The translations under genes were made by a program, and so were the position numbers. The notes under the pieces were generated by a model, which saw only the letters and a program-made list of their open reading frames with translations, searched no databases and was not told the DNA's origin. Shown piece after piece: positions 3,943 through 63,403 of a stretch of 64,000 bases of DNA. The stretch comes from Ranitomeya imitator (Eukaryota), in assembly GCF_032444005.1 (NCBI RefSeq), contig NC_091283.1:30752001-30816000 (forward strand). Reading direction: 5' to 3'. Position 1 is the first letter of the stretch, and each line of letters opens with the position of its first letter.

Positions 3943-4427
3943 ATTATTACAGGACGGGGACATTATTACAGAAAGGACCAGGAAGGGGAACATTATTACA
4001 GGACGGAGACATTATTACAGATAGGGCCAGGACGGGGACATTATTACAGGACGGGGACATTATTACAGAAAGGACCAGGAAGGGGGACATTATTACAGGA
4101 CGGAGACATTATTACAGAAAGGGCCAGGACGGGGACATTATTACAGGACAGGGACATTATTACAGAAAGGACCAGGAAGGGGGACATTATTACAGGACGG
4201 AGACATTATTACAGAAGGGGCCAGGACAGGGACATTATTACAGAAAGGGCCAGGAAGGGGGACATTATTACAGAAGGGGCCAGGAAGGGGGACATTATTA
4301 CAGGACGGGGACATTATTACAGGAGGGGCCAGGACAGGGACATTATTACAGAAAGGGCCAGGAAGGGGGACATTATTACAGGATGGGGACATTATTACAG
4401 AAAGGGCCAGGACGGGGACATTATTAC

Positions 4428-21003: not shown

Positions 21004-23903
21004 ATGGACAGGAGTCATAAAATGGCTGAGCAGATATTAAGCCTCACCCTGGAGATCATCTACCTGCTGACCGGAGAGGTGAGGACTTGTCGTAATTGTC
21101 ATATGATGTGACTCTGGATAAAGATGAGGCGAGAGATGATGAGTGATGTATATCAGTACGTCTCTCTGTACACAGGATTACACAGTCGTGAAGAAATCTG
21201 GTGAACGTGGGACAACCAGCTCCGATCACCAAGCATCAGGAGGATGGAGTGAGATCAGAAGTGCCATCATGGTGCCTCCACCTCCATCACCGATGCATGA
21301 GAGAAGCAACGAGCAGAAGATCGTGGAGATCACCAATAAGATCCTGCAGGTGGTGACCGGAGAGGTGAGCGCTGCCGAGGACGCCGGGACCTTATATAAT
21401 GTGTCTGGGTGATGACGGGACCGTTGTGTTGTCAGGTCCCAATGAGGTATCAGGACGTCACCGTCTATCTCTCCATGGAGGAGTGGGAGTATATGGAAGA
21501 ACACAAGGACCAGTACAAGGACGTCCTGATGGAGGACCCCCAACCCCTAGCAACAACCATTAAAGAGGAGACTGCCCATAAACATAAAGGTGGGCTTGTG
21601 ACTTATTTATTTTATGTTTTTCTCTGTCATCTGCCTCCTTCCGGACTAGTGAGGCAGACTACGCTCTTCTATATTGTATTCTGATGTACGTCAGCCTGAT
21701 GAAGGCCAAAATGAGACTATTTGTCCTCTGTTGAGTTTTCCTGGCACATGTCAGTGTGAATTCAGCTTGATCCGTACATGTTCAGTAACCTTATCCGTGT
21801 TTCTTACAGATGGACCAAGGCACAGTCCCTCACCAGAAAGTTGTCCCTGTCTAGTTTATTGTAAGGAAGGTCCAGGAGAAAATCCAAATGTCCCTCAGGA
21901 TCGACAGGTAGAAGAATCCTTCGACAAGGACATGAAGTGCCACAAGTAGACATCACTGCGTTATACTGTATATCATTTACTGCATCTTTGTTTTAGAACA
22001 ATGACCTGATTATTGTGAAAGTGGAAGAGATGGAGGGAGACGAGGAGTATTACAGAAGTGACGACCTGAAGAGGGAAGAGGAAACTCCGAGTAATGTCAG
22101 CACAGGTGAGTAATAACTGGACAAGAGAGAAGAGCCAACACACAAGCCGACCTGCCTCCCCGTGTAGGGGGGACGCTCAACGCTTCCTGACGGTTGATAT
22201 CAGGGCAGATCGGTATGAAACAGCTTGAAGTTCAATACGTGAGCCTTTTGTTCTCGGGAAAGATCAGCTGACCCCAGATCTGTCTGTCCAAACCTTTCTT
22301 GCCGTCCTCTATCTACTGAGAACCCATGGACCCTCGGCTAAGCCTTTATGAATGACCATATTCATGCTTCCTCATCCCAATTGTTAGCACAGTCTAAATC
22401 TCTGTTCCCAGCAGTGTCGTTCTCTCTTGTACTCGGCTCCGGAGGTCTGATGTCCCCCATTATAAGTTGACGAGATGAATTCTTCCAGACATAGGAGGTT
22501 CTCGCGTGTTCTATATCTTTTGGGTGTACGGAGCGGGATCTGGAAAATCAATTTCTCCATCTTCGGCAGCTACTGACTGTGACATACAGCCAACACCTGC
22601 CCCTAACAGCAATAAACGGAGCTCTGATCTCTGCTATTTAACCATTTTCGTGCCTCTGACAGTAGCATTTCAATGGCCCAGTCATTCCAGCATCCATCAG
22701 CTGAGCCACAGGCCGGGCTTCACTGGAGACCAGTGATTTTTTTTTTTATGCCCTGGAATATTAAAGTATTCCATTATTCCGTACAAGAGATTAAATAATC
22801 ATAAGTTCGAGTCCCATAAGGGCACTACAAAATAACGTAAAACGTAAAAATATATATATAAAAGTTTTAAATCACAAATTGAAAAATAAACATTTGATAG
22901 CATCGCGTCTGTAAAAATCCAATTTATCAAAATACAAAAAATTTAACCCATATGTTTAACTGAACTCCTCCGGGTGGATTTTTAACTGCATCAAAACTTT
23001 CTTGCGGTCACAAATCAGCTTAGAGGAATTTAGTAGAAGCCAGATGTGCGATATAATCACTGCTGTCATAACAATTGTACACGGAAGCTGCAAAAAGATT
23101 GACTTTTTATGAAAATGGCCCATGAATCCAAGATAGGGAGATCTTGGGTTCCCTACTGGGGACATAGACTCCTGATATATGGCATTAGGGTCTTGGTGTC
23201 CATCTACCACCTCTTTTTCTTCCCAGCAGATGTTCCTCTGAGCCTCGGCTGCGGTCCGCTCCCGTCATCTTCAGATTATTCGTCAAACATTAATATCTCA
23301 CCGACTACTTATGGACAGCCGTTTATTACCATAAACTTTCCTTCCCTCATCACCGGCGGCAATCTGCTGTCTGTTCCCACCACGGTCCTACAGCCATCAT
23401 CTGATCAGTCACAGGCTCCACGGCTGCCTCCAAAGGCCAGAGGAGAGAAGAAGCCGAACAACCGCAGAACCGAGGGACGATTTCCTTGTGCGGAATGTGG
23501 AAAAAGTTTTGCGATGAGATCAAACTTCCTGGAACATCTGAAAGTTCACACAGTGGAGAAGCCGCTCTCGTGTACCGTGTGCGGGAAGTGTTTCAAGCGG
23601 AAATCAGATCTCGTCAGACACCAGAAAACTCACACCGGGGAGAAGCCGCACTTGTGCACAGAATGCGGGAAACGTTTCGCCATTAAATCAAACCTCTTTG
23701 CGCATCACAGAATCCACACAGGAGAGCGGCCGTTCCCGTGTTCCGTGTGTGGGAAATGTTTCATCCAGAAGTCAGATCTGGTTGTGCATCAGATCGCTCA
23801 CACAGGGGAGAAGCCGTTCGGTTGTAGAGTGTGCGGGAAATATTTTAACCGGAAAAGAAGTCTTGTCCGACATGAGAGAATCCACATGAGAGATAAGTCA
23901 TAG
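21004..23903 (+). CDS. ZNF gene 2: KRAB-like C2H2 zinc-finger protein, ~433 aa, 5 fingers. Exons 21004-21078, 21176-21364, 21436-21589 (inferred shifted donor), 21810-21907, 21997-22105, 23227-23903
   Basis: Same exon architecture as gene 1. The usual KRAB-exon donor at 21560 is mutated; an in-frame AAG|GTGGGC donor lies 30 nt downstream. NAGNAG acceptor before the finger exon. Confidence 0.82.
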
Positions 23904-29334: not shown

Positions 29335-30788
29335 TTAAGTGATTGTCGGCGTATTTCAGTAGGACGACAGTCGTGAAGCGGGCCTATGAACAATCCTTTC
29401 CCAATAATCGGCCACGATGAGTGAACCTCAAGGCCTGGTTCGCATGTTGGGTATTTGGTGCGGATTTTCCAGCAATCGTAATCTAATCCTTGTGCTACAT
29501 TCTTGTTGGTTTGGAATCCGCTAGGCCCCCGGCCTGTGTCGTGTTTTCTAAGCCCACCACAGGTCAATTTCTGCAGTGAACATGTATCTTTTTACTGCAG
29601 ATTTTACTCATTTCAATTACTTTAAATCCACAGATTAAAACCTTGGTCGGACATTGCTCTGCTCCATCTTTTAAGTCCATTTATGTAAATAAAAACCGAA
29701 AACACATAATGCATGAGTAGTGTATAAGCGGGTGGTTTCGTCAAACTCAATCTGACAGGTGCCCCGCCCCTATCAAAGTGTATCAAAGTGTGTAACCCCT
29801 CCCCTCCCCTTGTTTGACGGCTGGTATCCAGCTGTCCCTCCTTGTTTGATTTCCCCTTTTGATATAGTTTAATATAGTTTAATTTGTTGTAGTTTTGATA
29901 TTATTCCCGTATTTTGTGGAATAACACATGTTTATAATTATAGCCTAGTCGTGTATTTATTTTACACGTGGTTTATAACACCTTTCTCATTTGTTTATAA
30001 TAGATTTTATACGTATCCCCGAGTTTGATTCTGTAAGCTTTTGTTTTATTCACAGTGTATTCATATAGTGGAGAACTTAAAGCTGTTTATATGTGTCTCT
30101 ACTGAACACTATGGTGAACATTAACTAAATGTTTATTTTCCCAAACAGAGAATCTGCTGTGGGTATTTGCAGTGTATTCATATAGTGGAGAACTTAAAGC
30201 TGTCTATTTGTTTTTGTAAATGGTGAACACTAACTAAATGGTGAACATTATCTAAATTAGGTTAACTGCGGTTCAGAGGTTCATAACACCTAGGTCAAGC
30301 AATTGTTGTTGTATTTGCGTACCCCATAAATGTTTATTTCCACAAACAGAAAAGTTATTGTGTCCTGAAGATGGCATCTGAGGTTATTTGTTATCTACTG
30401 AGGCCATTGCAAGCTGTGTTTATTCACATTGTAGCAGGTTTTATCCTTGTGGCTGCCTTATATACACAGAAGAGATATGCACCAATGTCACAACACAAGT
30501 TATAATATGACCCAATGTTACAATACAAGTAAGAAGCGGCGTGTTTTATACGAATAAAAACCAAAGACACGATATTGTAAAAAAAATTTAAAAGATTTAT
30601 TTCTCACGATAAAACAGCATCTCAAAGACATTTCAACACTATAAAAAATTCTTACAGAATATAAAAAGTAAAAACATTACAATACAGTAATATGACAGTA
30701 CAGTAACAGTACAATGATCAATTACACTTCTTACAAAATAATTAATATAGCGTTACAAGGCGTGTACAGCATTTATCCAGTACATTCT

Positions 30789-31559
30789 TTACATCGTGAG
30801 CCACATGGTTTGTAGCAGCGGTAGAGACCTTTTTTTAGGTAGCAAAGTTCCACGTGTGGTACCTAATGACGGGGAATGTAAAGATTGAATTGTACGGGGT
30901 GACGCCGCTAACTTCAGCGGTGTAGATACAGAGCGTGTCTCACTGTTGGTAATTTTTAATTCATCTAAAAGCTTCCTAGTAGCGGGGTTACCCACAACTG
31001 TAGACGGCATATTTAGCTCTGCCATAGCCTGCATAAATGAATCCCAACCCGGCGGTAAATTTCTACTGTTCAGAGCATGACTCTGCGTTGTACTACGTAC
31101 CAAATCCAGTAAGTTAGACCCTGGTATTACGGATCCTTTGAAAATAAATTCAGCATTATTATTCCATGCTGTGACATTTTTATTCTGCAGCAGCCTGTTT
31201 AGTAAAAATTCAGCATTCTTTTTATATCTTTGGTTTATATGGCCGACAATTTCAGCGATCTCATGATTTTTATCAGAGTCGGTATTTGGCAATTGCTGCT
31301 GACCAGGATCAGGAGGGCTAACGAGATTTAAAGCCGTTACTTCTCTTGAGCTGTGCCTCGTATGTACCAAGTAGCGTTGTAGCACAGCGCTATACATTTT
31401 AATTTTCACATCATCGGGAATGTCACGACGCTGTAAAATGTCGCTAATCTCACCATCAAGGCGCCGAATAACACTGTCGCGTATGTTATCTGTAGTACCG
31501 GGTCTTAGTTTGTCTAGCTCCTGTTTGGGGACTAGATACATTTTCGTTGTATGCTCCAT
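30789..31559 (-). CDS. Maverick/Polinton conserved accessory protein, 256 aa (left-arm copy)
   Basis: MEHTTKMYLVP..RLDGEISDILQR..DDVKIKMYSAVLQRYL and WNNNAEFIFKGSVIPGSNLLDLV..PPGWDSF..LNMPSTVVGN match my recollection of a conserved Polinton ORF. Not database-verified. Confidence 0.75.
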   Translation of the reverse strand: MEHTTKMYLVPKQELDKLRPGTTDNIRDSVIRRLDGEISDILQRRDIPDDVKIKMYSAVLQRYLVHTRHSSREVTALNLVSPPDPGQQQLPNTDSDKNHEIAEIVGHINQRYKKNAEFLLNRLLQNKNVTAWNNNAEFIFKGSVIPGSNLLDLVRSTTQSHALNSRNLPPGWDSFMQAMAELNMPSTVVGNPATRKLLDELKITNSETRSVSTPLKLAASPRTIQSLHSPSLGTTRGTLLPKKRSLPLLQTMWLTM

Positions 31560-31693
31560 TATCTTCCGGCGATCAGGCTTGTTATTATTGGGATTGCAAA
31601 AGCTAAAAGAGGACCGATAAACCCGCCGGCCTGTTTTAGTAGGCGCTTCTTTTTCTTTATGGGCTGAGACCTGTCGCCAGTGATTTTTGCACT
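31559..31693 (-). pseudogene. Same truncated small-protein remnant (left arm)
   Basis: Mirror of 41659-41793. Confidence 0.7.
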
Positions 31694-32564
31694 TTATTAA
31701 CATACAACACACAAGAAATAGACATTTAGAACTTATTTATGATTAATATGCGATTATTAGGCATTTAGGACTTATGTTATCATGTTTTTGCACTTTATTA
31801 ATATGCGGTTATTAGTCATTTAGGACTTATGTTATCATGTTTTTGCACTTTATTAATATGCTGACCACATAGGTCAGGGATTTTTTGTACTTTATTAATA
31901 TGCGGGCCACAAACACTTCTGCACCCACGGGCGCTTCTCAACCAACCATGCATCCGGTACTCATCAGGCACTGTGAAATAATGCAAAAATACATCTGTGC
32001 GCGGCTGTCGGCATCAACATTGTGCTATTATAAGTTTATGGTTCTGTAAAGAACACGCAACACATACAGAACTCACACACACACACAAATACACACAGCA
32101 CACAACACGCACACATTTCTCAAAATGCCATACACTTCAGAATATATTTGCAATTCACTACGCATGTAACACATATTTCTTCGCCCCACACGCATTTAAC
32201 AGTCTTTCATATGTATCGCAGAAAGATTTTAGTTCCAACTGCGGGTCAGCGGCTTAAAGAAAAGTTATTGTGGCCTTGATTCTGGGGTAACACATGTTTA
32301 TAAATATAGCCTAGTCGTGTATTTATTTTACACATGGTTTATAACACATTTCATGGCCTTGATTCTGGGGTAACACATGTTTATAAATATAGCCTAGTCG
32401 TGTATTTATTTTACACATGGTTTATAACACATTTCATTTGTTTTTGTTGTTTGATTGTCATGTAAGAAGCGTTGTGTTTTATACGAATATAAAAGTGACA
32501 CATTCCCATATATTATTACAGCTTTCATTAATTCTACATTATTTTAGCACATATTAATTTTACA

Positions 32565-32739
32565 CTATTAATTTTACAGGAGCCTGTGCTGCCTATAATT
32601 TGACTCCTTTTTATACAAAGACATCTAACATATACAGACTTTTAATATTTTTGTGTAAAATCGCGGTCAGACAGGCACAAACACACACACACACACACAC
32701 ACGCACACAACACAGAACCACACACAACAAACACACAGA

Positions 32740-32773
<34 letters not shown>

Positions 32774-33786
32774 GAAATAGACATTTAGGACTTATTTATG
32801 TTATTATCTTTATGCACTTTGAATGTGCTGTCTATAATTTGACTCTATCCTTGTTTTGTTGAAAATAACTGGACATACATAAGAAACCGGGCAATATATC
32901 TTTATAGAAATAACACTTCTGCACTCTTTGTGTATTTCTATCAGTTTTATTCAGGCATTTATAACACAACATGTTTGATATTGGTAATTTGATTCTGGGA
33001 ACACATTTTAAGTTACTGCTGCACATGTATTACTGTTTTTCTTGTTTTTTGTGTAAAATTTCGTTGTTGGTTTACAAAGACATTTCTTTGAGAAATGTGT
33101 AGCATAACCAATTACCCATCACGGCCACTAGATGGCAGAATATCATATTAATTATTCTGGGATAACATTTCTCTTTGTGCCTATTAATTTTACAGGAGCC
33201 TGTGCTGCCTATAATTTGACTCCTTTTTATACAAAGACATCTAACATATACAGACTTTTAATATTTTTGTGTAAAATCGCGGTCAGACAGGCACAAACAC
33301 ACACACACACACACACGCACACAACACAGAACCACACACAACAAACACACAGAACCCACACACACACACACACACACAAGAAATAGACATTTAGGACTTA
33401 TTTATGTTATTATCTTTATGCACTTTGAATGTGCTGTCTATAATTTGACTCTATCCTTGTTTTGTTGAAAATAACTGGACATACATAAGAAACCGGGCAA
33501 TATATCTTTATAGAAATAACACTTCTGCACTCTTTGTGTATTTCTATCAGTTTTATTCAGGCATTTATAACACAACATGTTTGATATTGGTAATTTGATT
33601 CTGGGAACACATTTTAAGTTACTGCTGCACATGTATTACTGTTTTTCTTGTTTTTTGTGTAAAATTTCGTTGTTGGCTTACAAAGACATTTCTTTGAGAA
33701 ATGTGTAGCATAACCAATTACCCATCACGGCCACTAGATGGCAGAATATCATATTAATTATTCTGGGATAACATTTCTCTTTGGGC
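32565..33786. repeat. Tandem duplication (616 + 606 bp) with CA microsatellites, left arm; mirrored at 39566-40787
   Basis: CTATTAATTTTACAGGAGCC at 32565 and 33181; duplicated ORFs offset by 606. Confidence 0.92.
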
Positions 33787-34349
33787 ATTTCTATCAGTTT
33801 TATTTATGCTTTTATAACACAACATGTCTGCTATTGTTAATTTGATTCGGGGATAACACATGTTTATAAAAATAACGCTATAGCAAGCGGTAATGTCAAA
33901 TTCTGAAAATAGCCATTTTATATTGAATTACTAACATTTTTCTATTTTAGCGCTGACACAGCCACATATATTATTCCAGCTTTCTTTAATTCTGCATTAT
34001 TTTATCACATGATGAAAATAGTCATTTTATATTGAATTACTGCAGCTCGCGGCGCGTTACCACTGGTCTCGTTTCTCAATTAATTTCCCAGCTGACGACG
34101 CTATCTATAATTCTGCGTATACCTTAGGCGTGTATTTACATGACAGTGTAATTATTTCTCACAATAAAACAACAGCTCAAATTTTAAGTTAGCTAACAGC
34201 ATAATGATGACAAATGCATCTTTGCGGAATCTGATAACGACACGCTGAACAAAGGACGGAGCCTGACAAATACACACAACACACAACACGCACATATTAT
34301 GAAAAATGACAACCATTGTATGTGATTTAAAAAACTTTAGTTAGATTTA

Positions 34350-36095
34350 TCAGGGGTGATTTAGTTTGAAAGCACGCAGCTCCTCGGTAATGTCATGTGT
34401 TGGACACGCATTTAACAGTCTTTCATATGTATCGCAGAAAGATTTTAGTTCCATCTGTGCGAGTTTGCTTTGAGCGTACTGCGCAGACATGTCAGTAAAC
34501 ATTTTGACATGGTCAGCATCCCACGAAGGACGACCTGTGTAAGGTGTATGTACAGCAACTTTCTGCTTTCTACCTACACGGCGTCGGGATACGGTTCGTT
34601 TCTTTAGAGGTAATACAGGGGCAAAAACGCTAGAAAAGTCTGCAAGAGCAGTATCTGCAGATTGCACAGTCTGGCACACAGGTATATTGAGGGGCTCTGT
34701 GGGTGACCACAGACCCTCGGAGAGCTGCTCAATTTCTCTGTTTTCAGGCGTAACTTGGGGTATGGCGCCTGTGCTATTGGCGGGCCGTGTTATGCGGGGC
34801 CGAGCGTTCGGCGCTGCACGTTTCTCTCTTGAAACGTTCGTATATTTCTGATGTGAAATCTTGGGGCTTGGATTCCCGGGTTGTTTTGGTGCAGCGTAGC
34901 ATTCATCACGATCCACAACACAGATGGGCGAGAGAGATGTTGTTCGCACCGCCGTATTAGCTCTTTGTGGTTGATTCTCTTCAGTGTCGTAATTACGCCA
35001 GTGCAAAACTCGTTGTTGAAGAGGCGACGTATCTAAAAGAAAAGATACAAGTGGCGGTTAGCCGCGAAACGGCGCAAAATTGGAAAAGCTAAACGGCGAC
35101 GCATAGCTATGATCATACGTAATATTTGAAAAGTTAATGGGGACAGGTAGCCATGAAATCATTGTAACAATATTTACATAAACCTGTATAGAGCAGTCCA
35201 GATATATACTTACAAGTATGAAGCGGGAATTGTCCCACATCAGCTCCTGGTTTAACGGGAGGCGCAATGCTCAAACTCGCAGAGGCGGGAATATTCTCTT
35301 TTTCAAGCTGTATTTTCCGGGCAACTAGATTAGCGGGTGTAAGTAAAAATATAACGATTAGCGAACACAGAATTGATTTTCTACACAAAACTGCAGCGGT
35401 GAGAAGAATATATATATATTCAAAAATGAATTTTCTGACAGTTAGCTAGCAGCTGTAAGTAAATATGAGTATTACACAAAAGTGAGAATCGACTGTATTT
35501 CAAGTGAACAGATACCTTTTCTATTCTTGAAACATCGGTGTAACGAGTTGCCGCGTCTTTTAGGCGCATCGGGTTTCGCTGAAGTTGCAGGGTTCTTGAC
35601 ATCTATGATCTCCACGTCTGAACCCAGCGTATCGCGTGGTTCGGGAACACACCAGTTTTCAGCCATAGCGTCAGATGTCTCCGTGTCAGTATCTGTATGA
35701 GAAATTGCGCGTAGTTCGTGTTTACATACAAAGGATTAAAGCAACTGATATAGTATAATATAGTTTTACGGTATAAACATATTTGCGGTGTAAATTAATA
35801 TAGCAAGACTTATGCCGCTATATATTAATAATTCAGTATTATATTGACGGCTACCGCTATTATTTGTTTTATTAATTTAATCATATATTTATTATGCCAT
35901 AATTTGTGTAATACAATAGTTAATAGATGCTATAGTTTTACGCCATAAACAGTATATATTAACATAGATAATATATATATATATATATATATTTAGCTTT
36001 CTTACATGTGATACATGAAAGATAAATATCTTTGTACCGTGTTACAATGACATTTTTCCCTATCTAAAAGCAAAAAGGTGCTCCTAATTACCCAT
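34350..36095 (-). CDS. Mirror copy of the three-exon 287-aa gene. Exons 36092-36095, 35516-35692, 34350-35032
   Basis: Exact reverse complement of the right-arm model. Confidence 0.65.
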
Positions 36096-36309
36096 GATGA
36101 GATGAAGAGCAGGCCCATTATCGGCTATCGGCGCCACGGCTTCAATGCGCGCATAATTCTGCGTTATGAAATTATTGCGCCAATCGGGCGACATACACGG
36201 CTCTTAAATAAGAAAGAATGCATGAATATATAATTAATATAATTTACTTATAATATAATGACACAATCAGAATGAGTCAATACTCTGTACATTATACGCG
36301 TATAATACC

Positions 36310-37042
36310 TAATTGTGTGCTTGCAAGAAGGGGGCTGCATTGCTCGCGAGGGTATTGGGCGTCCATCTTAAATAAATAGGGGATAAGTTTTATCTATAAC
36401 TGCGCCGCCAATAAATACAGTTTAAAACTACGTTACAAAAATATGCTTTACAGGCATTGATAATATTAGACCGCAAATAAAACAGTAAACACCTACTTTT
36501 CAGAGAGTAGCGCAACTGTTCAGAGAGAAATTACCACCCACCGTGAACACACCTACAGGAAACCGCATTATACGCCACCCGTGACTAATTGCGCGCACAT
36601 GTCAGATAACAATGGTTGTTATGACTCAGCCATAAGCCTTTCTATATTAATTATGTCCCACAAATATTGCTTATACAGTAAAAACTATATTATACATCGC
36701 TACTAAATATGCAGTTAGCTGCCAGTATAACACTAACTTATTAAACAAATAACATCCTTAATTATGGTTTAGAGATGCATAGTTAAATATAATTATGCAT
36801 TTGCGAATAATAACACAACTGTCTTATATACTTACATTTAGAATAGCTCTGCTTTTTATCCTAGTCGGACTTCTGGTGGATGTCTGTTGTACTGTAGTGG
36901 GACAGTCAGCTGTATTTATCCTGAGTGTCAGAAAGCAACTCAGGTGTTAACACCCAGAAACACACCCAGTTACGCCACATCACACGCCTTCTGTTAACAC
37001 CCAGAACACAGTCATACATGCAATTAATGCATGTATTAACTC
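36310..37042. other. Unique 733-bp central spacer of the palindrome
   Basis: Not self-complementary; no ORF of 60 aa or more; contains TGTTAACACCCAGAA twice and near-palindrome TTAATGCATGTATTAA (37024-37039). Confidence 0.9.
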
Positions 37043-37256
37043 GGTATTATACGCGTATAATGTACAGAGTATTGACTCATTCTGATTGTGTCATTATATT
37101 ATAAGTAAATTATATTAATTATATATTCATGCATTCTTTCTTATTTAAGAGCCGTGTATGTCGCCCGATTGGCGCAATAATTTCATAACGCAGAATTATG
37201 CGCGCATTGAAGCCGTGGCGCCGATAGCCGATAATGGGCCTGCTCTTCATCTCATC

Positions 37257-39002
37257 ATGGGTAATTAGGAGCACCTTTTTGCTTTTAGATAGGGAAAAAT
37301 GTCATTGTAACACGGTACAAAGATATTTATCTTTCATGTATCACATGTAAGAAAGCTAAATATATATATATATATATATATTATCTATGTTAATATATAC
37401 TGTTTATGGCGTAAAACTATAGCATCTATTAACTATTGTATTACACAAATTATGGCATAATAAATATATGATTAAATTAATAAAACAAATAATAGCGGTA
37501 GCCGTCAATATAATACTGAATTATTAATATATAGCGGCATAAGTCTTGCTATATTAATTTACACCGCAAATATGTTTATACCGTAAAACTATATTATACT
37601 ATATCAGTTGCTTTAATCCTTTGTATGTAAACACGAACTACGCGCAATTTCTCATACAGATACTGACACGGAGACATCTGACGCTATGGCTGAAAACTGG
37701 TGTGTTCCCGAACCACGCGATACGCTGGGTTCAGACGTGGAGATCATAGATGTCAAGAACCCTGCAACTTCAGCGAAACCCGATGCGCCTAAAAGACGCG
37801 GCAACTCGTTACACCGATGTTTCAAGAATAGAAAAGGTATCTGTTCACTTGAAATACAGTCGATTCTCACTTTTGTGTAATACTCATATTTACTTACAGC
37901 TGCTAGCTAACTGTCAGAAAATTCATTTTTGAATATATATATATTCTTCTCACCGCTGCAGTTTTGTGTAGAAAATCAATTCTGTGTTCGCTAATCGTTA
38001 TATTTTTACTTACACCCGCTAATCTAGTTGCCCGGAAAATACAGCTTGAAAAAGAGAATATTCCCGCCTCTGCGAGTTTGAGCATTGCGCCTCCCGTTAA
38101 ACCAGGAGCTGATGTGGGACAATTCCCGCTTCATACTTGTAAGTATATATCTGGACTGCTCTATACAGGTTTATGTAAATATTGTTACAATGATTTCATG
38201 GCTACCTGTCCCCATTAACTTTTCAAATATTACGTATGATCATAGCTATGCGTCGCCGTTTAGCTTTTCCAATTTTGCGCCGTTTCGCGGCTAACCGCCA
38301 CTTGTATCTTTTCTTTTAGATACGTCGCCTCTTCAACAACGAGTTTTGCACTGGCGTAATTACGACACTGAAGAGAATCAACCACAAAGAGCTAATACGG
38401 CGGTGCGAACAACATCTCTCTCGCCCATCTGTGTTGTGGATCGTGATGAATGCTACGCTGCACCAAAACAACCCGGGAATCCAAGCCCCAAGATTTCACA
38501 TCAGAAATATACGAACGTTTCAAGAGAGAAACGTGCAGCGCCGAACGCTCGGCCCCGCATAACACGGCCCGCCAATAGCACAGGCGCCATACCCCAAGTT
38601 ACGCCTGAAAACAGAGAAATTGAGCAGCTCTCCGAGGGTCTGTGGTCACCCACAGAGCCCCTCAATATACCTGTGTGCCAGACTGTGCAATCTGCAGATA
38701 CTGCTCTTGCAGACTTTTCTAGCGTTTTTGCCCCTGTATTACCTCTAAAGAAACGAACCGTATCCCGACGCCGTGTAGGTAGAAAGCAGAAAGTTGCTGT
38801 ACATACACCTTACACAGGTCGTCCTTCGTGGGATGCTGACCATGTCAAAATGTTTACTGACATGTCTGCGCAGTACGCTCAAAGCAAACTCGCACAGATG
38901 GAACTAAAATCTTTCTGCGATACATATGAAAGACTGTTAAATGCGTGTCCAACACATGACATTACCGAGGAGCTGCGTGCTTTCAAACTAAATCACCCCT
39001 GA
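37257..39002 (+). CDS. Predicted three-exon gene of unknown function, 287 aa. Exons 37257-37260, 37660-37836, 38320-39002
   Basis: ATCATGG|GTAATT, CATACAG|AT, AAAG|GTATCT and CTAAC..(Y)n..TTAG|AT. Both introns are phase 1 and join the 64-aa and 218-aa ORFs in frame (864 nt). Exons 2-3 are better supported than the 4-nt first coding exon. Confidence 0.65.
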
Positions 39003-40578
39003 TAAATCTAACTAAAGTTTTTTAAATCACATACAATGGTTGTCATTTTTCATAATATGTGCGTGTTGTGTGTTGTGTGTATTTGTCAGGCTCCGTCCTT
39101 TGTTCAGCGTGTCGTTATCAGATTCCGCAAAGATGCATTTGTCATCATTATGCTGTTAGCTAACTTAAAATTTGAGCTGTTGTTTTATTGTGAGAAATAA
39201 TTACACTGTCATGTAAATACACGCCTAAGGTATACGCAGAATTATAGATAGCGTCGTCAGCTGGGAAATTAATTGAGAAACGAGACCAGTGGTAACGCGC
39301 CGCGAGCTGCAGTAATTCAATATAAAATGACTATTTTCATCATGTGATAAAATAATGCAGAATTAAAGAAAGCTGGAATAATATATGTGGCTGTGTCAGC
39401 GCTAAAATAGAAAAATGTTAGTAATTCAATATAAAATGGCTATTTTCAGAATTTGACATTACCGCTTGCTATAGCGTTATTTTTATAAACATGTGTTATC
39501 CCCGAATCAAATTAACAATAGCAGACATGTTGTGTTATAAAAGCATAAATAAAACTGATAGAAATGCCCAAAGAGAAATGTTATCCCAGAATAATTAATA
39601 TGATATTCTGCCATCTAGTGGCCGTGATGGGTAATTGGTTATGCTACACATTTCTCAAAGAAATGTCTTTGTAAGCCAACAACGAAATTTTACACAAAAA
39701 ACAAGAAAAACAGTAATACATGTGCAGCAGTAACTTAAAATGTGTTCCCAGAATCAAATTACCAATATCAAACATGTTGTGTTATAAATGCCTGAATAAA
39801 ACTGATAGAAATACACAAAGAGTGCAGAAGTGTTATTTCTATAAAGATATATTGCCCGGTTTCTTATGTATGTCCAGTTATTTTCAACAAAACAAGGATA
39901 GAGTCAAATTATAGACAGCACATTCAAAGTGCATAAAGATAATAACATAAATAAGTCCTAAATGTCTATTTCTTGTGTGTGTGTGTGTGTGTGTGGGTTC
40001 TGTGTGTTTGTTGTGTGTGGTTCTGTGTTGTGTGCGTGTGTGTGTGTGTGTGTGTTTGTGCCTGTCTGACCGCGATTTTACACAAAAATATTAAAAGTCT
40101 GTATATGTTAGATGTCTTTGTATAAAAAGGAGTCAAATTATAGGCAGCACAGGCTCCTGTAAAATTAATAGGCACAAAGAGAAATGTTATCCCAGAATAA
40201 TTAATATGATATTCTGCCATCTAGTGGCCGTGATGGGTAATTGGTTATGCTACACATTTCTCAAAGAAATGTCTTTGTAAACCAACAACGAAATTTTACA
40301 CAAAAAACAAGAAAAACAGTAATACATGTGCAGCAGTAACTTAAAATGTGTTCCCAGAATCAAATTACCAATATCAAACATGTTGTGTTATAAATGCCTG
40401 AATAAAACTGATAGAAATACACAAAGAGTGCAGAAGTGTTATTTCTATAAAGATATATTGCCCGGTTTCTTATGTATGTCCAGTTATTTTCAACAAAACA
40501 AGGATAGAGTCAAATTATAGACAGCACATTCAAAGTGCATAAAGATAATAACATAAATAAGTCCTAAATGTCTATTTC

Positions 40579-40612
<34 letters not shown>

Positions 40613-41658
40613 TCTGTGTGTTTGTTGTGTGTGGTTCTGTGTTGTGTGCGTGTGTGTGTGTGTGTGTGTGTTTGTGCCTGTCTGACCGCGATTTTACACA
40701 AAAATATTAAAAGTCTGTATATGTTAGATGTCTTTGTATAAAAAGGAGTCAAATTATAGGCAGCACAGGCTCCTGTAAAATTAATAGTGTAAAATTAATA
40801 TGTGCTAAAATAATGTAGAATTAATGAAAGCTGTAATAATATATGGGAATGTGTCACTTTTATATTCGTATAAAACACAACGCTTCTTACATGACAATCA
40901 AACAACAAAAACAAATGAAATGTGTTATAAACCATGTGTAAAATAAATACACGACTAGGCTATATTTATAAACATGTGTTACCCCAGAATCAAGGCCATG
41001 AAATGTGTTATAAACCATGTGTAAAATAAATACACGACTAGGCTATATTTATAAACATGTGTTACCCCAGAATCAAGGCCACAATAACTTTTCTTTAAGC
41101 CGCTGACCCGCAGTTGGAACTAAAATCTTTCTGCGATACATATGAAAGACTGTTAAATGCGTGTGGGGCGAAGAAATATGTGTTACATGCGTAGTGAATT
41201 GCAAATATATTCTGAAGTGTATGGCATTTTGAGAAATGTGTGCGTGTTGTGTGCTGTGTGTATTTGTGTGTGTGTGTGAGTTCTGTATGTGTTGCGTGTT
41301 CTTTACAGAACCATAAACTTATAATAGCACAATGTTGATGCCGACAGCCGCGCACAGATGTATTTTTGCATTATTTCACAGTGCCTGATGAGTACCGGAT
41401 GCATGGTTGGTTGAGAAGCGCCCGTGGGTGCAGAAGTGTTTGTGGCCCGCATATTAATAAAGTACAAAAAATCCCTGACCTATGTGGTCAGCATATTAAT
41501 AAAGTGCAAAAACATGATAACATAAGTCCTAAATGACTAATAACCGCATATTAATAAAGTGCAAAAACATGATAACATAAGTCCTAAATGCCTAATAATC
41601 GCATATTAATCATAAATAAGTTCTAAATGTCTATTTCTTGTGTGTTGTATGTTAATAA

Positions 41659-41793
41659 AGTGCAAAAATCACTGGCGACAGGTCTCAGCCCATAAAGAAA
41701 AAGAAGCGCCTACTAAAACAGGCCGGCGGGTTTATCGGTCCTCTTTTAGCTTTTGCAATCCCAATAATAACAAGCCTGATCGCCGGAAGATAA
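41659..41793 (+). pseudogene. 5'-truncated remnant of a Maverick small basic protein ending in a GGF-amphipathic helix (right arm)
   Basis: A frame not listed in the ORF track reads SAKITGDRSQPIKKKKRLLKQAGGFIGPLLAFAIPIITSLIAGR*. Its TAA overlaps the next ATG (TAATG). Confidence 0.7.
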
Positions 41794-42563
41794 TGGAGCA
41801 TACAACGAAAATGTATCTAGTCCCCAAACAGGAGCTAGACAAACTAAGACCCGGTACTACAGATAACATACGCGACAGTGTTATTCGGCGCCTTGATGGT
41901 GAGATTAGCGACATTTTACAGCGTCGTGACATTCCCGATGATGTGAAAATTAAAATGTATAGCGCTGTGCTACAACGCTACTTGGTACATACGAGGCACA
42001 GCTCAAGAGAAGTAACGGCTTTAAATCTCGTTAGCCCTCCTGATCCTGGTCAGCAGCAATTGCCAAATACCGACTCTGATAAAAATCATGAGATCGCTGA
42101 AATTGTCGGCCATATAAACCAAAGATATAAAAAGAATGCTGAATTTTTACTAAACAGGCTGCTGCAGAATAAAAATGTCACAGCATGGAATAATAATGCT
42201 GAATTTATTTTCAAAGGATCCGTAATACCAGGGTCTAACTTACTGGATTTGGTACGTAGTACAACGCAGAGTCATGCTCTGAACAGTAGAAATTTACCGC
42301 CGGGTTGGGATTCATTTATGCAGGCTATGGCAGAGCTAAATATGCCGTCTACAGTTGTGGGTAACCCCGCTACTAGGAAGCTTTTAGATGAATTAAAAAT
42401 TACCAACAGTGAGACACGCTCTGTATCTACACCGCTGAAGTTAGCGGCGTCACCCCGTACAATTCAATCTTTACATTCCCCGTCATTAGGTACCACACGT
42501 GGAACTTTGCTACCTAAAAAAAGGTCTCTACCGCTGCTACAAACCATGTGGCTCACGATGTAA
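41793..42563 (+). CDS. Maverick/Polinton conserved accessory protein, 256 aa (right-arm copy)
   Basis: Identical to the left copy. ATG in good Kozak context (ATAATGG); AATAAA downstream at ~42750. Confidence 0.75.
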   Translation: MEHTTKMYLVPKQELDKLRPGTTDNIRDSVIRRLDGEISDILQRRDIPDDVKIKMYSAVLQRYLVHTRHSSREVTALNLVSPPDPGQQQLPNTDSDKNHEIAEIVGHINQRYKKNAEFLLNRLLQNKNVTAWNNNAEFIFKGSVIPGSNLLDLVRSTTQSHALNSRNLPPGWDSFMQAMAELNMPSTVVGNPATRKLLDELKITNSETRSVSTPLKLAASPRTIQSLHSPSLGTTRGTLLPKKRSLPLLQTMWLTM

Positions 42564-43933
42564 AGAATGTACTGGATAAATGCTGTACACGCCTTGTAAC
42601 GCTATATTAATTATTTTGTAAGAAGTGTAATTGATCATTGTACTGTTACTGTACTGTCATATTACTGTATTGTAATGTTTTTACTTTTTATATTCTGTAA
42701 GAATTTTTTATAGTGTTGAAATGTCTTTGAGATGCTGTTTTATCGTGAGAAATAAATCTTTTAAATTTTTTTTACAATATCGTGTCTTTGGTTTTTATTC
42801 GTATAAAACACGCCGCTTCTTACTTGTATTGTAACATTGGGTCATATTATAACTTGTGTTGTGACATTGGTGCATATCTCTTCTGTGTATATAAGGCAGC
42901 CACAAGGATAAAACCTGCTACAATGTGAATAAACACAGCTTGCAATGGCCTCAGTAGATAACAAATAACCTCAGATGCCATCTTCAGGACACAATAACTT
43001 TTCTGTTTGTGGAAATAAACATTTATGGGGTACGCAAATACAACAACAATTGCTTGACCTAGGTGTTATGAACCTCTGAACCGCAGTTAACCTAATTTAG
43101 ATAATGTTCACCATTTAGTTAGTGTTCACCATTTACAAAAACAAATAGACAGCTTTAAGTTCTCCACTATATGAATACACTGCAAATACCCACAGCAGAT
43201 TCTCTGTTTGGGAAAATAAACATTTAGTTAATGTTCACCATAGTGTTCAGTAGAGACACATATAAACAGCTTTAAGTTCTCCACTATATGAATACACTGT
43301 GAATAAAACAAAAGCTTACAGAATCAAACTCGGGGATACGTATAAAATCTATTATAAACAAATGAGAAAGGTGTTATAAACCACGTGTAAAATAAATACA
43401 CGACTAGGCTATAATTATAAACATGTGTTATTCCACAAAATACGGGAATAATATCAAAACTACAACAAATTAAACTATATTAAACTATATCAAAAGGGGA
43501 AATCAAACAAGGAGGGACAGCTGGATACCAGCCGTCAAACAAGGGGAGGGGAGGGGTTACACACTTTGATACACTTTGATAGGGGCGGGGCACCTGTCAG
43601 ATTGAGTTTGACGAAACCACCCGCTTATACACTACTTGCATGAATAGAAGCAGAAAATAAACTCGGATTTTAGATGCAGAAACTTTGCAGACTGCAGTTG
43701 AGAAATCAATGCATGTTCACGTGATGTGTTCCTGATGGGGTTTTGCGCTGACATTTTGCAAAAATTAAGTGAATTCACCTGATTTTACCACGTTTGGGTA
43801 AACATCAAATTCCGCATCAGGAACATATCATGTGAACAATGTCGAAAACTGCATCAAATACACAAATGTCCTGAATGCAGGTTTAGCTTGGAGAGTTCAG
43901 CTCTGAAGCCTGAGGTCATGTTCCAACATAGTA

Positions 43934-46311: not shown

Positions 46312-46532
46312 ACTCCTCCGTGGTGGATGTGAGAGTGTATGTGTACACTGTACACGGTGTGTATATATATGTAATTACAATGGGGGAAATAAGTATTTGA
46401 TCCCTTGCTGATTTTGTAAGTTTGCCCACTGACAAAGACACGAACAGTCTATAATTTTAAGGATAGGTTAATTTTAACATTGAGAGATAGAATATCAAAA
46501 ATAAAATCCAGAAAATCACATTGTATAAATTA

Positions 46533-47282
<750 letters not shown>

Positions 47283-50904: not shown

Positions 50905-53900
50905 ATGGACACGAGTCCCAAGAGTCCCAACAAGACTGTGCAGATCCTAGACCTGACCCTGGAGATCATCTACCTGCTGACCGGAGAGGTGAGGACCCGT
51001 GAGTCCTAACAATGGAGGCCGCATGATCAGAAATCTTTCAAACTTTCAGAAATGTATATAGTAGAGTTGAGCAGAAACATTGTTCTTCCCCGGTTCTGCG
51101 TCCAGTGCAGCCCTCCGAGGCGGACAGACCTGTGTTGTGTTCTCTCCTGGCATTGACTAGGCCCCGCGATGTCACGATGTGGCGGTGCTAGTAAATGCCC
51201 AGGACGCCGTCTGAGAAGGGAACACTGCCTTGGACTGGACACCGGATGAGATCAGCACCTGCTCATCTCTAGTATTTTCGTCTCAGCTGCAGTTTCATAC
51301 ATCCACCATTTGGGGCGCTATATTATGACCTTTACTAGGCTGAATTATAGTTATTCGGGACAAGTAATATATACAAATTTTCATATGCAAATTGGTAACT
51401 TATTTTCATAAATTATCAACCTAAAAGGGGTTGTGCTGTAAATTGGATGGGATTCGGCCATTCAAGTCTATTAATGCAAGAGAAAAATCGGTTGCCATAC
51501 AGAGCCACAATCTAGCGATCAATTCTTACGGATACATTGCAGTTCTGTAACATAGGGAACTGTAAATGATCTTGTAGGAGATTAATAGCTGCTGCTGTAA
51601 AAATACAGTTTGTACACGGATGACAAGTGAGAAAATAAATCGTCACACTTTTCTGGATGAAGAAAGTTAGAGGCACTCACCAGTGTCCATACCCAGTGTC
51701 TATAAAAAGATTGTTTGTTTGTTTTTTAAATTTCAAATCTTCCTTGAAACCATCTCTGTGGCAGAGGGAGCGGAGTGAGAGCGGCAGAGGGAGCGGAGAG
51801 AGAGCGGCAGAGGGAGTAGAGAGAGCGGCAGAGGGAGCATGGTGAGAGAGCGGCAGAGGGAGCGGAGAGAGAGCGGCAGAGGGAGCGGAGAGAGAGCGGC
51901 AGAGGGAGCGGAGTGAGAGCGGCAGAGGGAGCGGAGTGAGAGTGGCAGAGGGAGCGGAGTGAGAGTGGCAGAGGGAGCATGGTGAGAGTGGCAGAGGGAG
52001 CGGAGTGAGAGTGGCAGAGGGAGCATGGTGAGAGTGGCAGAGGGAGCATGGTGAGAGTGGCAGAGGGAGCGGAGTGAGAGCGCAGAGGGAGCATGGTGAG
52101 AGTGGCAGAGGGAGCTGAGAGAGAGTGGCAGAGGGAGCATGGTGAGAGTGGCAGAGGGAGCATGGTGAGAGTGGCAGAGGGAGCATGGTGAGAGTGGCAG
52201 AGGGAGCATGGTGAGAGCGGCAGAGGGAGCATGGTGAGAGTGGCAGAGGGAGCGGAGTGAGAGCGCAGAGGGAGCGGAGTGAGCGGCAGAGGGAGCGGAG
52301 TGAGAGTGGCAGAGAGAGCAGAGAGAGCGGCAGAGGGAGCATGGTGAGAGTGGCAGAGGGAGCGGAGAGAGAGCAGCAGAGGGAGCATGGTGAGAGTGGC
52401 AGAGGGAGCATGGTGAGTGGCAGAGGGAGCATGGTGAGAGCGGCAGAGGGAGCATGGTGAGAGTGGCAGAGGGAGCATGGTGAGAGTGGCAGAGGGAGCG
52501 GAGAGAGAGCGGCAGAGGGAGCATGGTGAGAGCGGCAGAGGGAGCATGGTGAGAGCGGCAGAGGGAGCATGGTGAGAGTGGCAGAGGGAGCGGAGAGAGA
52601 GCGGCAGAGGGAGCATGGTGAGAGTGGCAGAGGGAGCGGAGTGAGAGTGGCAGAGGGAGCGGAGTGAGAGTGGCAGAGGGAGCATGGTGAGAGTGGCAGA
52701 GGGAGCATGGTGAGAGTGGCAGAGGGAGCATGGTGAGAGTGGCAGAGGGAGCGGAGTGAGAGTGGCAGAGGGAGCGGAGTGAGAGTGGCAGAGGGAGCAT
52801 GGTGAGAGTGGCAGAGGGAGCGGAGTGAGAGTGGCAGAGGGAGCGGAGTGAGAGTGGCAGAGGGAGCATGGTGAGAGTGGCAGAGGGAGCATGGTGAGAG
52901 TGGCAGAGGGAGCATGGTGAGAGTGGCAGAGGGAGCATGGTGAGAGTGGCAGAGGGAGCGGAGTGAGAGTGGCAGAGGGAGCGGAGTGAGAGTGGCAGAG
53001 GGAGCATGGTGAGAGTGGCAGAGGGAGCGGAGTGAGAGCGCAGAGGGAGCGGAGTGAGCGGCAGAGGGAGCGGAGTGAGAGTGGCAGAGAGAGCAGAGAG
53101 AGCGGCAGAGGGAGCATGGTGAGAGTGGCAGAGGGAGCGGAGAGAGAGCAGCAGAGGGAGCATGGCGAGAGTGGCAGAGGGAGCATGGTGAGAGTGGCAG
53201 AGGGAGCATGGTGAGTGGCAGAGGGAGCATGGTGAGAGCGGCAGAGGGAGCATGGTGAGAGTGGCAGAGGGAGCATGGTGAGAGTGGCAGAGGGAGCATG
53301 GTGAGAGTGGCAGAGGGAGCATGGTGAGAGTGGCAGAGGGAGCGGAGTGAGAGTGGCAGAGGGAGCGGAGTGAGAGTGGCAGAGGGAGCGGAGTGAGAGT
53401 GGCAGAGGGAGCGGAGTGAGAGTGGCAGAGGGAGCATGGTGAGAGTGGCAGAGGGAGCATGGTGAGAGTGGCAGAGGGAGCATGGTGAGAGTGGCAGAGG
53501 GAGCATGGTGAGAGTGGCAGAGGGAGCATGGTGAGAGTGGCAGAGGGAGCGGAGTGAGAGTGGCAGAGGGAGCATGGTGAGAGTGGCAGAGGGAGCGGAG
53601 TGGGAGTGGCAGAGGGAGCGGAGTGAGAGTGGCAGAGGGAGCATGGTGAGAGTGGCAGAGGGAGCATGGTGAGAGTGGCAGAGGGAGCATGGTGAGAGTG
53701 GCAGAGGGAGCATGGTGAGAGTGGCAGAGGGAGCGGAGTGAGAGTGGCAGAGGGAGCGGAGTGAGATTGGCAGAGGGAGCGGAGTGAGATTGGCAGAGGG
53801 AGCATGGTGAGAGTGGCAGAGGGAGCATGGTGAGAGTGGCAGAGGGAGCATGGTGAGAGTGGCAGAGGGAGCATGGTGAGAGTGGCAGAGGGAGCGGAGT

Positions 53901-61442: not shown

Positions 61443-63403
<1,961 letters not shown>

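What the first reader, a model, noticed from the sequence alone, without database searches (positions are those of the whole stretch)
29710..43642. A 13.9-kb Maverick/Polinton derivative that is one giant palindrome and integrated as a unit
Seen: two 6,594-bp inverted arms (29716-36309 and 37043-43636) around a 733-bp spacer, with AGTAGT...ACTACT ends. A direct 6-bp repeat TGCATG flanks both ends; it is not self-complementary, so it is a true TSD and not an extension of the mirror. Established: Mavericks have AG/AGT-repeat termini suited to protein-primed replication, 6-bp TSDs from a retroviral-like integrase, and TIRs usually well under ~1 kb. Here about 95% of the element is TIR and no polB, integrase, ATPase, protease or capsid ORF is present. 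Inference: one end of a Maverick was copied back onto itself, like a snap-back/copy-back defective viral genome. That gave a molecule with two identical origins, which a helper Maverick then replicated and integrated in trans. It would be a satellite or defective-interfering class of endogenous polintovirus; I do not know of a described example.
Basis: partly seen in the sequence, partly recalled or inferred. Interest (0 to 1): 0.95.

Follow-up and report, generated by a model that had tools for sequence, protein, structure and literature searches.

The report
Palindromic gene-carrying Maverick derivative in frog
A 13.9-kb virus-like transposon remnant in a poison-frog genome consists of one end of a Maverick element copied in mirror image; it carries a frog gene instead of replication genes, and its core recurs on several chromosomes, so it probably spread as a unit with outside help.

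Summary
The arms 29716-36309 and 37043-43636 are 6,594 nt long with no mismatch. They lie around a 733-nt unique spacer, end in AGTAGT/ACTACT and are flanked by a direct TGCATG repeat. The outer ~2 kb of each arm is a genuine Maverick end: an intact PZ gene, a truncated PM gene and a terminal motif shared with frog Mavericks that carry polB-ATPase-PM-PZ. No polB, ATPase, integrase, protease or capsid gene is in the window.

It is repeats plus a 5-exon gene of unknown function. Exon 1 lies in the spacer, so only the left copy is complete. That copy encodes exactly a Ranitomeya imitator protein (379 aa).

The R. imitator annotation places this protein at six sites on five chromosomes. Five of those sites have an opposite-strand partner at exactly the window's spacing. 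Close relatives occur without a partner, or with other spacings. This favours spread of the palindrome as a unit. Three points remain inference: a copy-back origin, dependence on a helper, and interference with that helper. I found no described precedent. I rate it a new variant of a known kind.

The parts
29710..29715 (.). Left copy of the 6-bp target-site duplication TGCATG
29716..36309 (.). Left arm, 6,594 nt, exact reverse complement of the right arm. It starts with AGTAGT.
30789..31559 (-). PZ gene, left copy (256 codons plus stop). Intact and transcribed towards the left terminus.
   Evidence: full-length match to the 252-aa PZ of L002 (56% identity)
31562..31678 (-). PM gene remnant, left copy. 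One truncation: only the C-terminal ~39 codons remain.
   Evidence: residues 71-109 of the 109-aa PM of L001/L002
32565..33802 (.). Tandem duplication of ~606-616 bp with a CA microsatellite, left-arm copy
34350..36366 (-). Complete 5-exon cargo gene: exons 36366-36309, 36202-36092, 35692-35516, 35324-35214, 35032-34350. It encodes the 379-aa R. imitator protein P0041 exactly. Exon 1 lies in the spacer.
36291..36306 (.). 16-nt perfect palindrome ATTATACGCGTATAAT, 3 nt from the inner edge of the left arm, in intron 1 of the cargo gene
36310..37042 (.). Unique 733-nt spacer: all but the last base of cargo exon 1 (36310-36366, minus strand; the exon ends at 36309) plus 676 nt upstream of its ATG
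37046..37061 (.). Mirror copy of the 16-nt palindrome, 3 nt from the inner edge of the right arm
37043..43636 (.). Right arm, 6,594 nt. It ends with ACTACT.
37150..39002 (+). Cargo gene, right copy: exons 2-5 only (one truncation, exon 1 missing). Its product corresponds to the annotated 314/324-aa proteins P0052/P0065.
39550..40787 (.). Tandem duplication of ~606-616 bp with a TG microsatellite, right-arm copy
40915..41081 (.). Two 83-bp units related (90-92%) to the subterminal unit 43356-43438. The internal non-coding DNA is partly built from the element's own end.
41674..41790 (+). PM gene remnant, right copy (one truncation)
41793..42563 (+). PZ gene, right copy. Intact and transcribed towards the right terminus.
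42564..43636 (.). Non-coding terminal region. A subterminal motif (43578-43612) and the ACTACT end are shared with the Maverick contig L002.
43637..43642 (.). Right copy of the 6-bp target-site duplication TGCATG

Best explanation
This is a non-autonomous derivative of an anuran Maverick (Polinton) in Ranitomeya imitator, built as a giant palindrome. SHOWN: it keeps two identical Maverick 'PZ-side' ends. Each has an (AGT)2 terminus, ~1 kb of terminal non-coding DNA, an intact PZ gene and a truncated PM gene. It has lost every replication, integration and capsid gene. Inward of the Maverick part, each arm carries repeats and a 5-exon gene of unknown function. The spacer holds that gene's first exon and upstream region, so only the left copy is complete. 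INFERRED, origin: an already gutted, cargo-carrying, non-palindromic relative underwent one inverted-duplication event. Relatives of that kind exist at 7 sites without an annotated partner gene. Synthesis running inward from one end switched strand about 0.7 kb beyond the cargo gene's start and copied the same arm back out to the terminus. The new joint lies next to a 16-nt perfect palindrome. This is the DNA equivalent of a copy-back or snap-back defective genome. The product has two identical protein-priming origins and two integrase-recognised ends. At 13.9 kb it falls back inside the size range of intact vertebrate Mavericks. INFERRED, spread: polB, terminal-protein function, integrase and probably capsid from an autonomous Maverick then replicated and integrated it in trans, giving the 6-bp TSD. 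The same core (379-aa gene and its opposite-strand partner, ATG-to-partner-stop distance 2,636 bp) is annotated at five sites on at least four chromosomes, with identical proteins. A sixth site shows no separate partner gene. This pattern, together with 0 mismatches in 6,594 nt between the arms, indicates recent spread of the palindrome as a unit.
For: Structure and TSD. Maverick identity of the ends: PZ homologues lie on contigs ordered polB (PF03175) - A32-like ATPase - PM - PZ - terminus, or beside an rve+chromo integrase and a weak adenoviral-protease match. Only PM (C-terminal part) and PZ match the window. L002 shares the subterminal motif and the ACTACT end. Published vertebrate Maverick features: (AGT)2//(ACT)2 ends, 6-bp TSD, TIRs 46-1,447 bp, size 12.7-24.6 kb, module ppolb-atp-pm-pz, pointing outward in a toad (PMC8097293). 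Cargo gene: (an exact GT-AG splice model reproduces P0041). Multi-locus core: P0041 lies at 6 places on 5 contigs of GCA_032444005.1. Five of them have a 314/324-aa gene on the other strand at coordinates that reproduce the window's geometry to the base. The arm copies there differ by 0 aa. Non-palindromic close relatives: P0053 at 7 places with no partner. Intron-bearing host-derived cargo in Mavericks has a precedent in nematodes (bioRxiv 10.1101/2022.07.12.499685).
Against: No DNA of the other loci could be fetched. Their outer arms, termini and TSDs are therefore unseen, and the unit-spread argument rests on annotated gene coordinates only. No polB from R. imitator or R. variabilis came back among 26 polB hits, so a resident helper is not shown. 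R. variabilis does have an ATPase-PM-PZ locus. Two related loci have a partner at other distances (1,954 and 2,461 bp). So either palindromes form repeatedly or their centres are remodelled in place, which weakens the 'one event, then spread' reading. Perfect arm identity could also come from gene conversion or from assembly. The progenitor sequence beyond the spacer is unknown, so microhomology at the joint cannot be assessed.
Confidence: 0.6

Rival explanations
1. The mirror formed in the chromosome after an ordinary insertion. A Maverick derivative with short TIRs inserted here and made the TSD. A later break inside it was repaired by the right TIR invading the left TIR and copying the left arm inward, followed by end joining. 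The palindrome was never mobile as such.
For: This locus alone fits equally well: the TSD, the ends and a single odd joint beside a hairpin-prone 16-nt palindrome. Related loci with other spacings show that such centres do get remodelled or form more than once.
Against: The same geometry, to the base, with identical proteins, is annotated at five sites on different chromosomes. Independent repair events would not reproduce one joint.
Confidence: 0.12
2. Gradual TIR growth rather than one copy-back event. In protein-primed linear replicons, panhandle pairing of displaced strands lets one end be corrected against the other, so TIRs can creep inward until they meet a region under selection (the promoter and first exon of the cargo gene).
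For: The mirror stops exactly at the last base of exon 1. This would be expected if the unique part is whatever must stay single-copy. Relatives with other spacer lengths exist.
Against: No intermediate TIR lengths are seen. Close relatives have either no annotated partner at all (7 sites) or a nearly complete one. Published vertebrate TIRs stop at 1.4 kb.
Confidence: 0.12
3. The core spread by segmental duplication or by another transposon's machinery, not by Maverick integration. The Maverick ends at this locus are incidental.
For: For the other sites only gene coordinates within about 2.6 kb of the centre are known.
Against: At the one locus that can be read, the mirror ends exactly at canonical Maverick termini with a 6-bp TSD and unique flanks. 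The neighbours differ between sites (an IPK gene at one, none at others). No nested TIR element lies within the arm.
Confidence: 0.08
4. Assembly artefact: a fold-back chimeric read or a wrong graph path created the mirror.
For: There are zero differences in 6.6 kb, including microsatellites and tandem repeats. Reads cannot be inspected here.
Against: Fold-back artefacts mirror the flank too and have no long unique centre. Here the mirror stops at the element ends, the flanks are unique and carry a TSD, and the centre is a functional-looking promoter plus exon. The same assembly holds non-mirrored relatives.
Confidence: 0.05

Closest known systems
Vertebrate Mavericks / Polintons (Barreat & Katzourakis 2021, PMC8097293)
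   Same: (AGT)2//(ACT)2 ends and a 6-bp TSD. PM and PZ genes lie next to the terminus and point outward, as described for a toad. Total length is within the reported 12.7-24.6 kb.
   Different: TIRs are 6,594 bp, against a published maximum of 1,447 bp. There is no polB, ATPase, integrase, protease or capsid gene. Seventy per cent of each arm is cargo and repeats.
Copy-back / snap-back defective viral genomes (review PMC13506859)
   Same: One genome end is duplicated in reverse complement around a unique loop. Replication genes are lost and two identical origins remain.
   Different: Those are described mainly for RNA viruses and as transient replication products. This one is DNA, integrated in a germline and multi-copy. 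Interference with a helper is untested.
Palindromic derivatives of protein-primed linear DNA replicons: adenovirus defective genomes with large inverted repetitions, and hairpin/palindromic deletion forms of yeast killer plasmids (from my own knowledge; the one cited paper I tried, PMC354034, is not held)
   Same: They share the replication chemistry (protein priming at both ends, strand displacement) and the outcome: one end duplicated in mirror image, dependent on a helper.
   Different: They are extrachromosomal and not integrated with a TSD, and none is known in Mavericks.
Cargo-carrying nematode Mavericks (bioRxiv 10.1101/2022.07.12.499685)
   Same: A region with intron-containing, host-like genes lies next to a TIR, and the cargo family is multi-copy.
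   Different: The nematode elements keep their core genes and ordinary TIRs. Here the core is gone and the cargo is duplicated in mirror image.
Mu killer of maize (PMC3440606)
   Same: A natural inverted duplication of part of a DNA transposon including its TIR, which can give a long hairpin transcript.
   Different: It belongs to a different superfamily and is a single immobile locus. Silencing is shown there and not tested here.
Foldback elements (Drosophila FB; from my own knowledge)
   Same: Most of the element is inverted repeat around a short centre.
   Different: FB arms are built of short tandem repeats, the TSD is 9 bp, and there are no Maverick ends or genes.

Membership tests
Maverick/Polinton (as a derivative) | 6-bp target-site duplication | tested here: met
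   TGCATG lies on both sides and is not self-complementary. The feature is defined in PMC8097293.
Maverick/Polinton (as a derivative) | Terminal inverted repeats with a reiterated end motif, (AGT)2//(ACT)2 | tested here: met
   motif as published
Maverick/Polinton (as a derivative) | Sequence homology of ends or genes to elements that carry protein-primed polB and rve integrase | tested here: met
   PZ and PM match contigs with polB-ATPase-PM-PZ or with rve+chromo integrase. The terminal motif is shared with L002.
Maverick/Polinton (autonomous member) | Own polB, integrase, ATPase, protease and capsid genes | tested here: not met
   tblastn with these proteins from L001, L002 and L005 finds nothing in the 64-kb window. 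No Pfam hit on the element's ORFs.
Maverick/Polinton (autonomous member) | TIR length in the known range (46-1,447 bp) | tested here: not met
   6,594 bp against the range
Copy-back / snap-back defective genome | Reverse-complement duplication of one genome end around a unique loop, with loss of the other end | tested here: met
   Both ends are the PZ side, and no integrase-side sequence is present.
Copy-back / snap-back defective genome | Arises by template switching of the replicating polymerase | not testable with these tools
   Only the product is seen. The joint lies beside a 16-nt palindrome, but the progenitor sequence is unknown.
Copy-back / snap-back defective genome | Depends on, and interferes with, a helper | not testable with these tools
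   Dependence follows from gene content. No Ranitomeya polB was found. Interference has not been examined.
Non-autonomous transposon family | Several dispersed copies with the same structure and different target sites | tested here: inconclusive
   The same core geometry is annotated at five sites, on at least four of the five contigs that carry the protein. No DNA was available, so ends and TSDs are unseen.
Foldback (FB) transposons | Arms made of short tandem repeats; 9-bp TSD | tested here: not met
   The arms are mostly unique sequence with genes, and the TSD is 6 bp.

The most novel reading that the evidence does not exclude
Vertebrate Mavericks generate copy-back defective genomes during protein-primed replication. 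One such genome, having regained a packageable size by mirroring itself, became a heritable, amplifying satellite family that ferries a fast-evolving frog gene. It would be the first germline-fixed defective-interfering-like genome of a DNA virus-like element. It would also be indirect evidence that frog Mavericks have recently replicated as linear genomes.
Probability: 0.4. Interest if true: 0.85.

Novelty: new variant of a known kind. Interest (0 to 1): 0.72.

Why it matters
Nobody has watched a Maverick replicate. Protein priming, strand displacement, a packaging size limit and supply of functions in trans are all inferred from gene content. A mirror-image half-genome with canonical ends and a TSD is what those inferences predict as a by-product. 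It lies within the size window of intact elements and appears copied to several chromosomes, so it offers a purely sequence-based handle on Maverick replication. Four literature searches found no description of a non-autonomous Maverick; the one mention met, in the Anolis study, is of their apparent absence. The element also shows a vertebrate Maverick lineage carrying an intron-bearing cargo gene. That gene family is multi-copy across dendrobatoid frogs (Ranitomeya, Phyllobates, Anomaloglossus) and has no recognisable domain. Finally, a 6.6-kb perfect inverted repeat is a potential source of long hairpin RNA and of chromosome fragility in the host.

Tried and rejected
- Pfam on all element ORFs gave nothing meaningful.
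- The cargo protein family has no Pfam hit and no solved-structure relative. The AlphaFold model is poor (mean pLDDT 42), with only a C-terminal helical hairpin at residues 325-377 confident. I ran no fold search because the matches would be meaningless.
- The weak hits P0014-P0022 to the last exon are translated repeat arrays and are spurious.
- The exact window PZ protein is not on record as a called gene.
- DNA of other R. imitator, R. variabilis and Anomaloglossus loci could not be fetched because the files are too large. One look-up failed in the queue.
- The conserved 18-nt subterminal motif in viral and metagenome contigs gave 1 + 43 hits, all by chance. None has PZ, polB, ATPase or integrase.
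- No paralogous 'empty site' for the flanks exists in the window.
- No other copy of any element-internal sequence exists in the window.
- No nested TIR element lies inside an arm.
- Rfam gave nothing.
- The bacterial promoter/terminator scan of the spacer is irrelevant for a frog gene.
- Literature searches for palindromic, long-TIR or non-autonomous Mavericks found no precedent. The old adenovirus defective-genome paper is not held.


Full report
**1. The observation**

The repeat finder returns one dominant inverted pair, 29716-36314 and 37038-43636. A base-by-base check shows 0 mismatches over 6,594 nt. The only two mismatches are in the innermost five bases.

The spacer is not palindromic, and the window has no N. 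The element begins AGTAGTG and ends CACTACT, and TGCATG lies directly outside both ends. The reverse complement of TGCATG is CATGCA, so this is a direct 6-bp repeat and not a continuation of the mirror. The terminal 31-mer occurs nowhere else in the window. The 1-kb flanks are unique and unrelated to each other. The element is 13,921 bp, and 94.7% of it is inverted repeat.

**2. What the arms contain**

*Maverick part.* The 256-codon ORF at 41793-42563 (mirror 30789-31559) has homologues at 43-56% identity on short assembled contigs, in a turtle, and in Ranitomeya variabilis (91% over the part annotated there). The contigs show the context:
- L002, L005 and L006 read a 383-aa ORF, polB (PF03175, 1,298 aa), an A32-like ATPase, a 109-aa ORF, then the 252-aa ORF.
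- L001 carries the pair next to an rve+chromodomain integrase and a weak adenoviral-protease match.

This matches the published module ppolb-atp-pm-pz of vertebrate Mavericks. The published element of one toad has modules pointing outward towards the ends, as here (PMC8097293). I therefore call the two ORFs PM and PZ. That assignment rests on synteny; no tool returned those names.

In the window, PZ is intact in both arms. PM has one truncation, and only its C-terminal ~39 codons remain. Nothing else of a Maverick core is present anywhere in the 64 kb.

About 0.7 kb beyond PZ, L002 has a subterminal motif and an ACTACT end that align with the window's right end. Its best polB relatives are all anuran, from Anomaloglossus, Eleutherodactylus, Xenopus, Rana and Phyllobates. 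So the outer ~2 kb of each arm is a true end of a frog Maverick.

*Cargo part.* The inner ~4.6 kb of each arm has no Maverick homology. It holds:
- a ~606-bp tandem duplication with a TG microsatellite;
- 55-bp and 83-bp tandem units, the latter related to the element's own subterminal region;
- a second small fragment of the cargo gene's last exon.

It also holds a spliced gene. The 218-codon ORF at 38346-39002 is the last exon of a protein family found only in dendrobatoid frogs: R. imitator, R. variabilis, Phyllobates terribilis and Anomaloglossus baeobatrachus. The family is multi-copy in each species. tblastn places four exons in the right arm.

The missing first exon (19 codons) is in the spacer, on the minus strand at 36310-36366, abutting the left arm. 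One GT-AG splice model of the left copy reproduces the 379-aa R. imitator protein P0041 exactly. Its exons are 36366-36309, 36202-36092, 35692-35516, 35324-35214 and 35032-34350. The window is therefore from R. imitator. The spacer is the gene's first exon plus its upstream region, and the right copy lacks exon 1.

The perfect mirror begins at the last base of exon 1. A 16-nt perfect palindrome lies 3 nt inside each arm and occurs nowhere else in the window.

The protein has no Pfam or PDB relative. It is predicted disordered except for a C-terminal helical hairpin. Intron-bearing host-like cargo next to a TIR has a precedent in nematode Mavericks.

**3. Evidence from other loci**

No DNA could be fetched for other frog loci, but the annotation gives gene coordinates.

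- **P0041.** It is encoded at six places on five contigs of GCA_032444005.1. At five of them, a 314- or 324-aa gene lies on the opposite strand. The distance from the ATG of the 379-aa gene to the stop of the partner is 2,636 bp, and the gene spans are 2,017 and 1,317 bp. These are the window's own numbers (36366 to 39002; 34350-36366; 37686-39002). The partner proteins P0052 and P0065 differ from P0041 by 0 residues over the shared part. At the sixth place the partner is probably absorbed into a P450 gene model.
- **P0053.** This close relative (5 residues different) occurs at seven places, often inside introns of unrelated host genes. It has no partner within 10 kb.
- **P0054.** It occurs at three places. 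Two have partners at other distances, 1,954 and 2,461 bp.
- **P0068.** This more diverged copy has no partner.

So the cargo gene rides on a dispersed family that includes mirrored and apparently unmirrored members. The window's exact mirror is present several times.

**4. Mechanism**

*Shown:* a mirror duplication of the PZ-side end, canonical ends, a TSD, loss of all enzymatic and structural genes, and several annotated sites with the identical core.

*Inferred:* the mirror arose once from an unmirrored, already defective relative. The cause was a strand switch during displacement synthesis, or hairpin-primed repair, next to the 16-nt palindrome. The product carries two identical origins and integrase ends and was propagated in trans.

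Its 13.9 kb lies within the 12.7-24.6 kb of intact vertebrate Mavericks, whereas one arm plus the spacer (7.3 kb) would not. Regaining a packageable size is a plausible selective reason. It parallels undersized adenoviral genomes, a point I take from my own knowledge.

With no difference in 2 x 6,594 nt, the mirror is either very young or kept uniform by gene conversion.

**5. Rivals**

- *Formation in place by TIR-primed repair* explains this locus but not five identical cores.
- *Gradual TIR growth* would explain why the mirror stops exactly at exon 1, but no graded series is seen.
- *Segmental duplication* is not excluded for the unseen loci.
- *An assembly artefact* is unlikely, given the unique flanks, the TSD and a long, meaningful centre.

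The loci with other spacings are the main unexplained point. They suggest either repeated palindrome formation or remodelling of palindrome centres.

**6. What is not shown**

No Ranitomeya polB came back among the 26 polB hits. R. variabilis has an ATPase-PM-PZ locus. A present-day helper in R. imitator is therefore unproven.

**7. Novelty**

Searches of the held literature found TIRs of up to 1.4 kb in vertebrate Mavericks, 744 bp in C. elegans and 584 bp in Anolis. They found no palindromic or copy-back Maverick. The only remark on non-autonomous copies is that they are apparently absent from Anolis. I rate the element a new variant of a known kind.

**8. Possible slip**

An earlier count gave an approximate coordinate at which Maverick homology ends inside the arm. 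That point is also the truncated edge of PM. I treated it as a segment bound, flag it here, and have not repeated it in this report. The only joining was of the predicted exons of the cargo gene, as they stand, to test the splice model.

Noticed in passing
window 36291-36306 and 37046-37061: A 16-nt perfect palindrome (ATTATACGCGTATAAT) sits 3 nt inside each arm's inner edge, just after the splice donor of cargo intron 1. It occurs nowhere else in the window. It may be the strand-switch or stalling site.
   Followed up: partly
window 36309/36310: The perfect mirror starts at the very last base of cargo exon 1. The coincidence of the duplication boundary with an exon-intron boundary is unexplained.
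   Followed up: partly
R. imitator GCA_032444005.1, loci of P0054 (no DNA): Two related mirrored loci have ATG-to-partner-stop distances of 1,954 and 2,461 bp instead of 2,636 bp. Their centres are about 680 and 175 bp shorter, through either independent palindrome formation or centre deletions.
   Followed up: partly
Anomaloglossus baeobatrachus GCA_048569485.1, P0027 (no DNA): An identical 387-aa homologue of the cargo protein lies on four contigs, three times with the same 5,488-bp gene span. The family is also mobile or recently duplicated in a distant dendrobatoid.
   Followed up: no
window 41111-41164 and 38895-38948: A 54-nt fragment of the cargo gene's last exon is repeated 2,216 bp further out in the arm (98% identical). 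This hints at an older internal duplication.
   Followed up: no
window 51758-55648: A satellite of ~170 copies of a 23-bp unit, strongly G- and A-skewed and open in three frames. A similar array of 34/102-bp units lies at 8734-10990, and minisatellites lie at 3943-4433 and 5507-7191.
   Followed up: no
window 14752-15354, 23109-23903, 58154-58843: C2H2 zinc-finger ORFs: the element sits in a zinc-finger gene cluster.
   Followed up: no
window 61661-62734 (-) and 46530-47240 (-): A Tc1/mariner transposase ORF of 357 aa with HTH and DDE domains that looks intact, and a second partial DDE_3 ORF.
   Followed up: no
window 2671-3993 (-): A reverse-transcriptase (RVT_1) ORF of 440 aa, a retroelement fragment.
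   Followed up: no
P0007 / P0055 (R. imitator, 206-Mb contig): Gene models fuse cytochrome P450 exons to the cargo gene's last exons. This is probably an annotation read-through into an arm of another copy.
   Followed up: no
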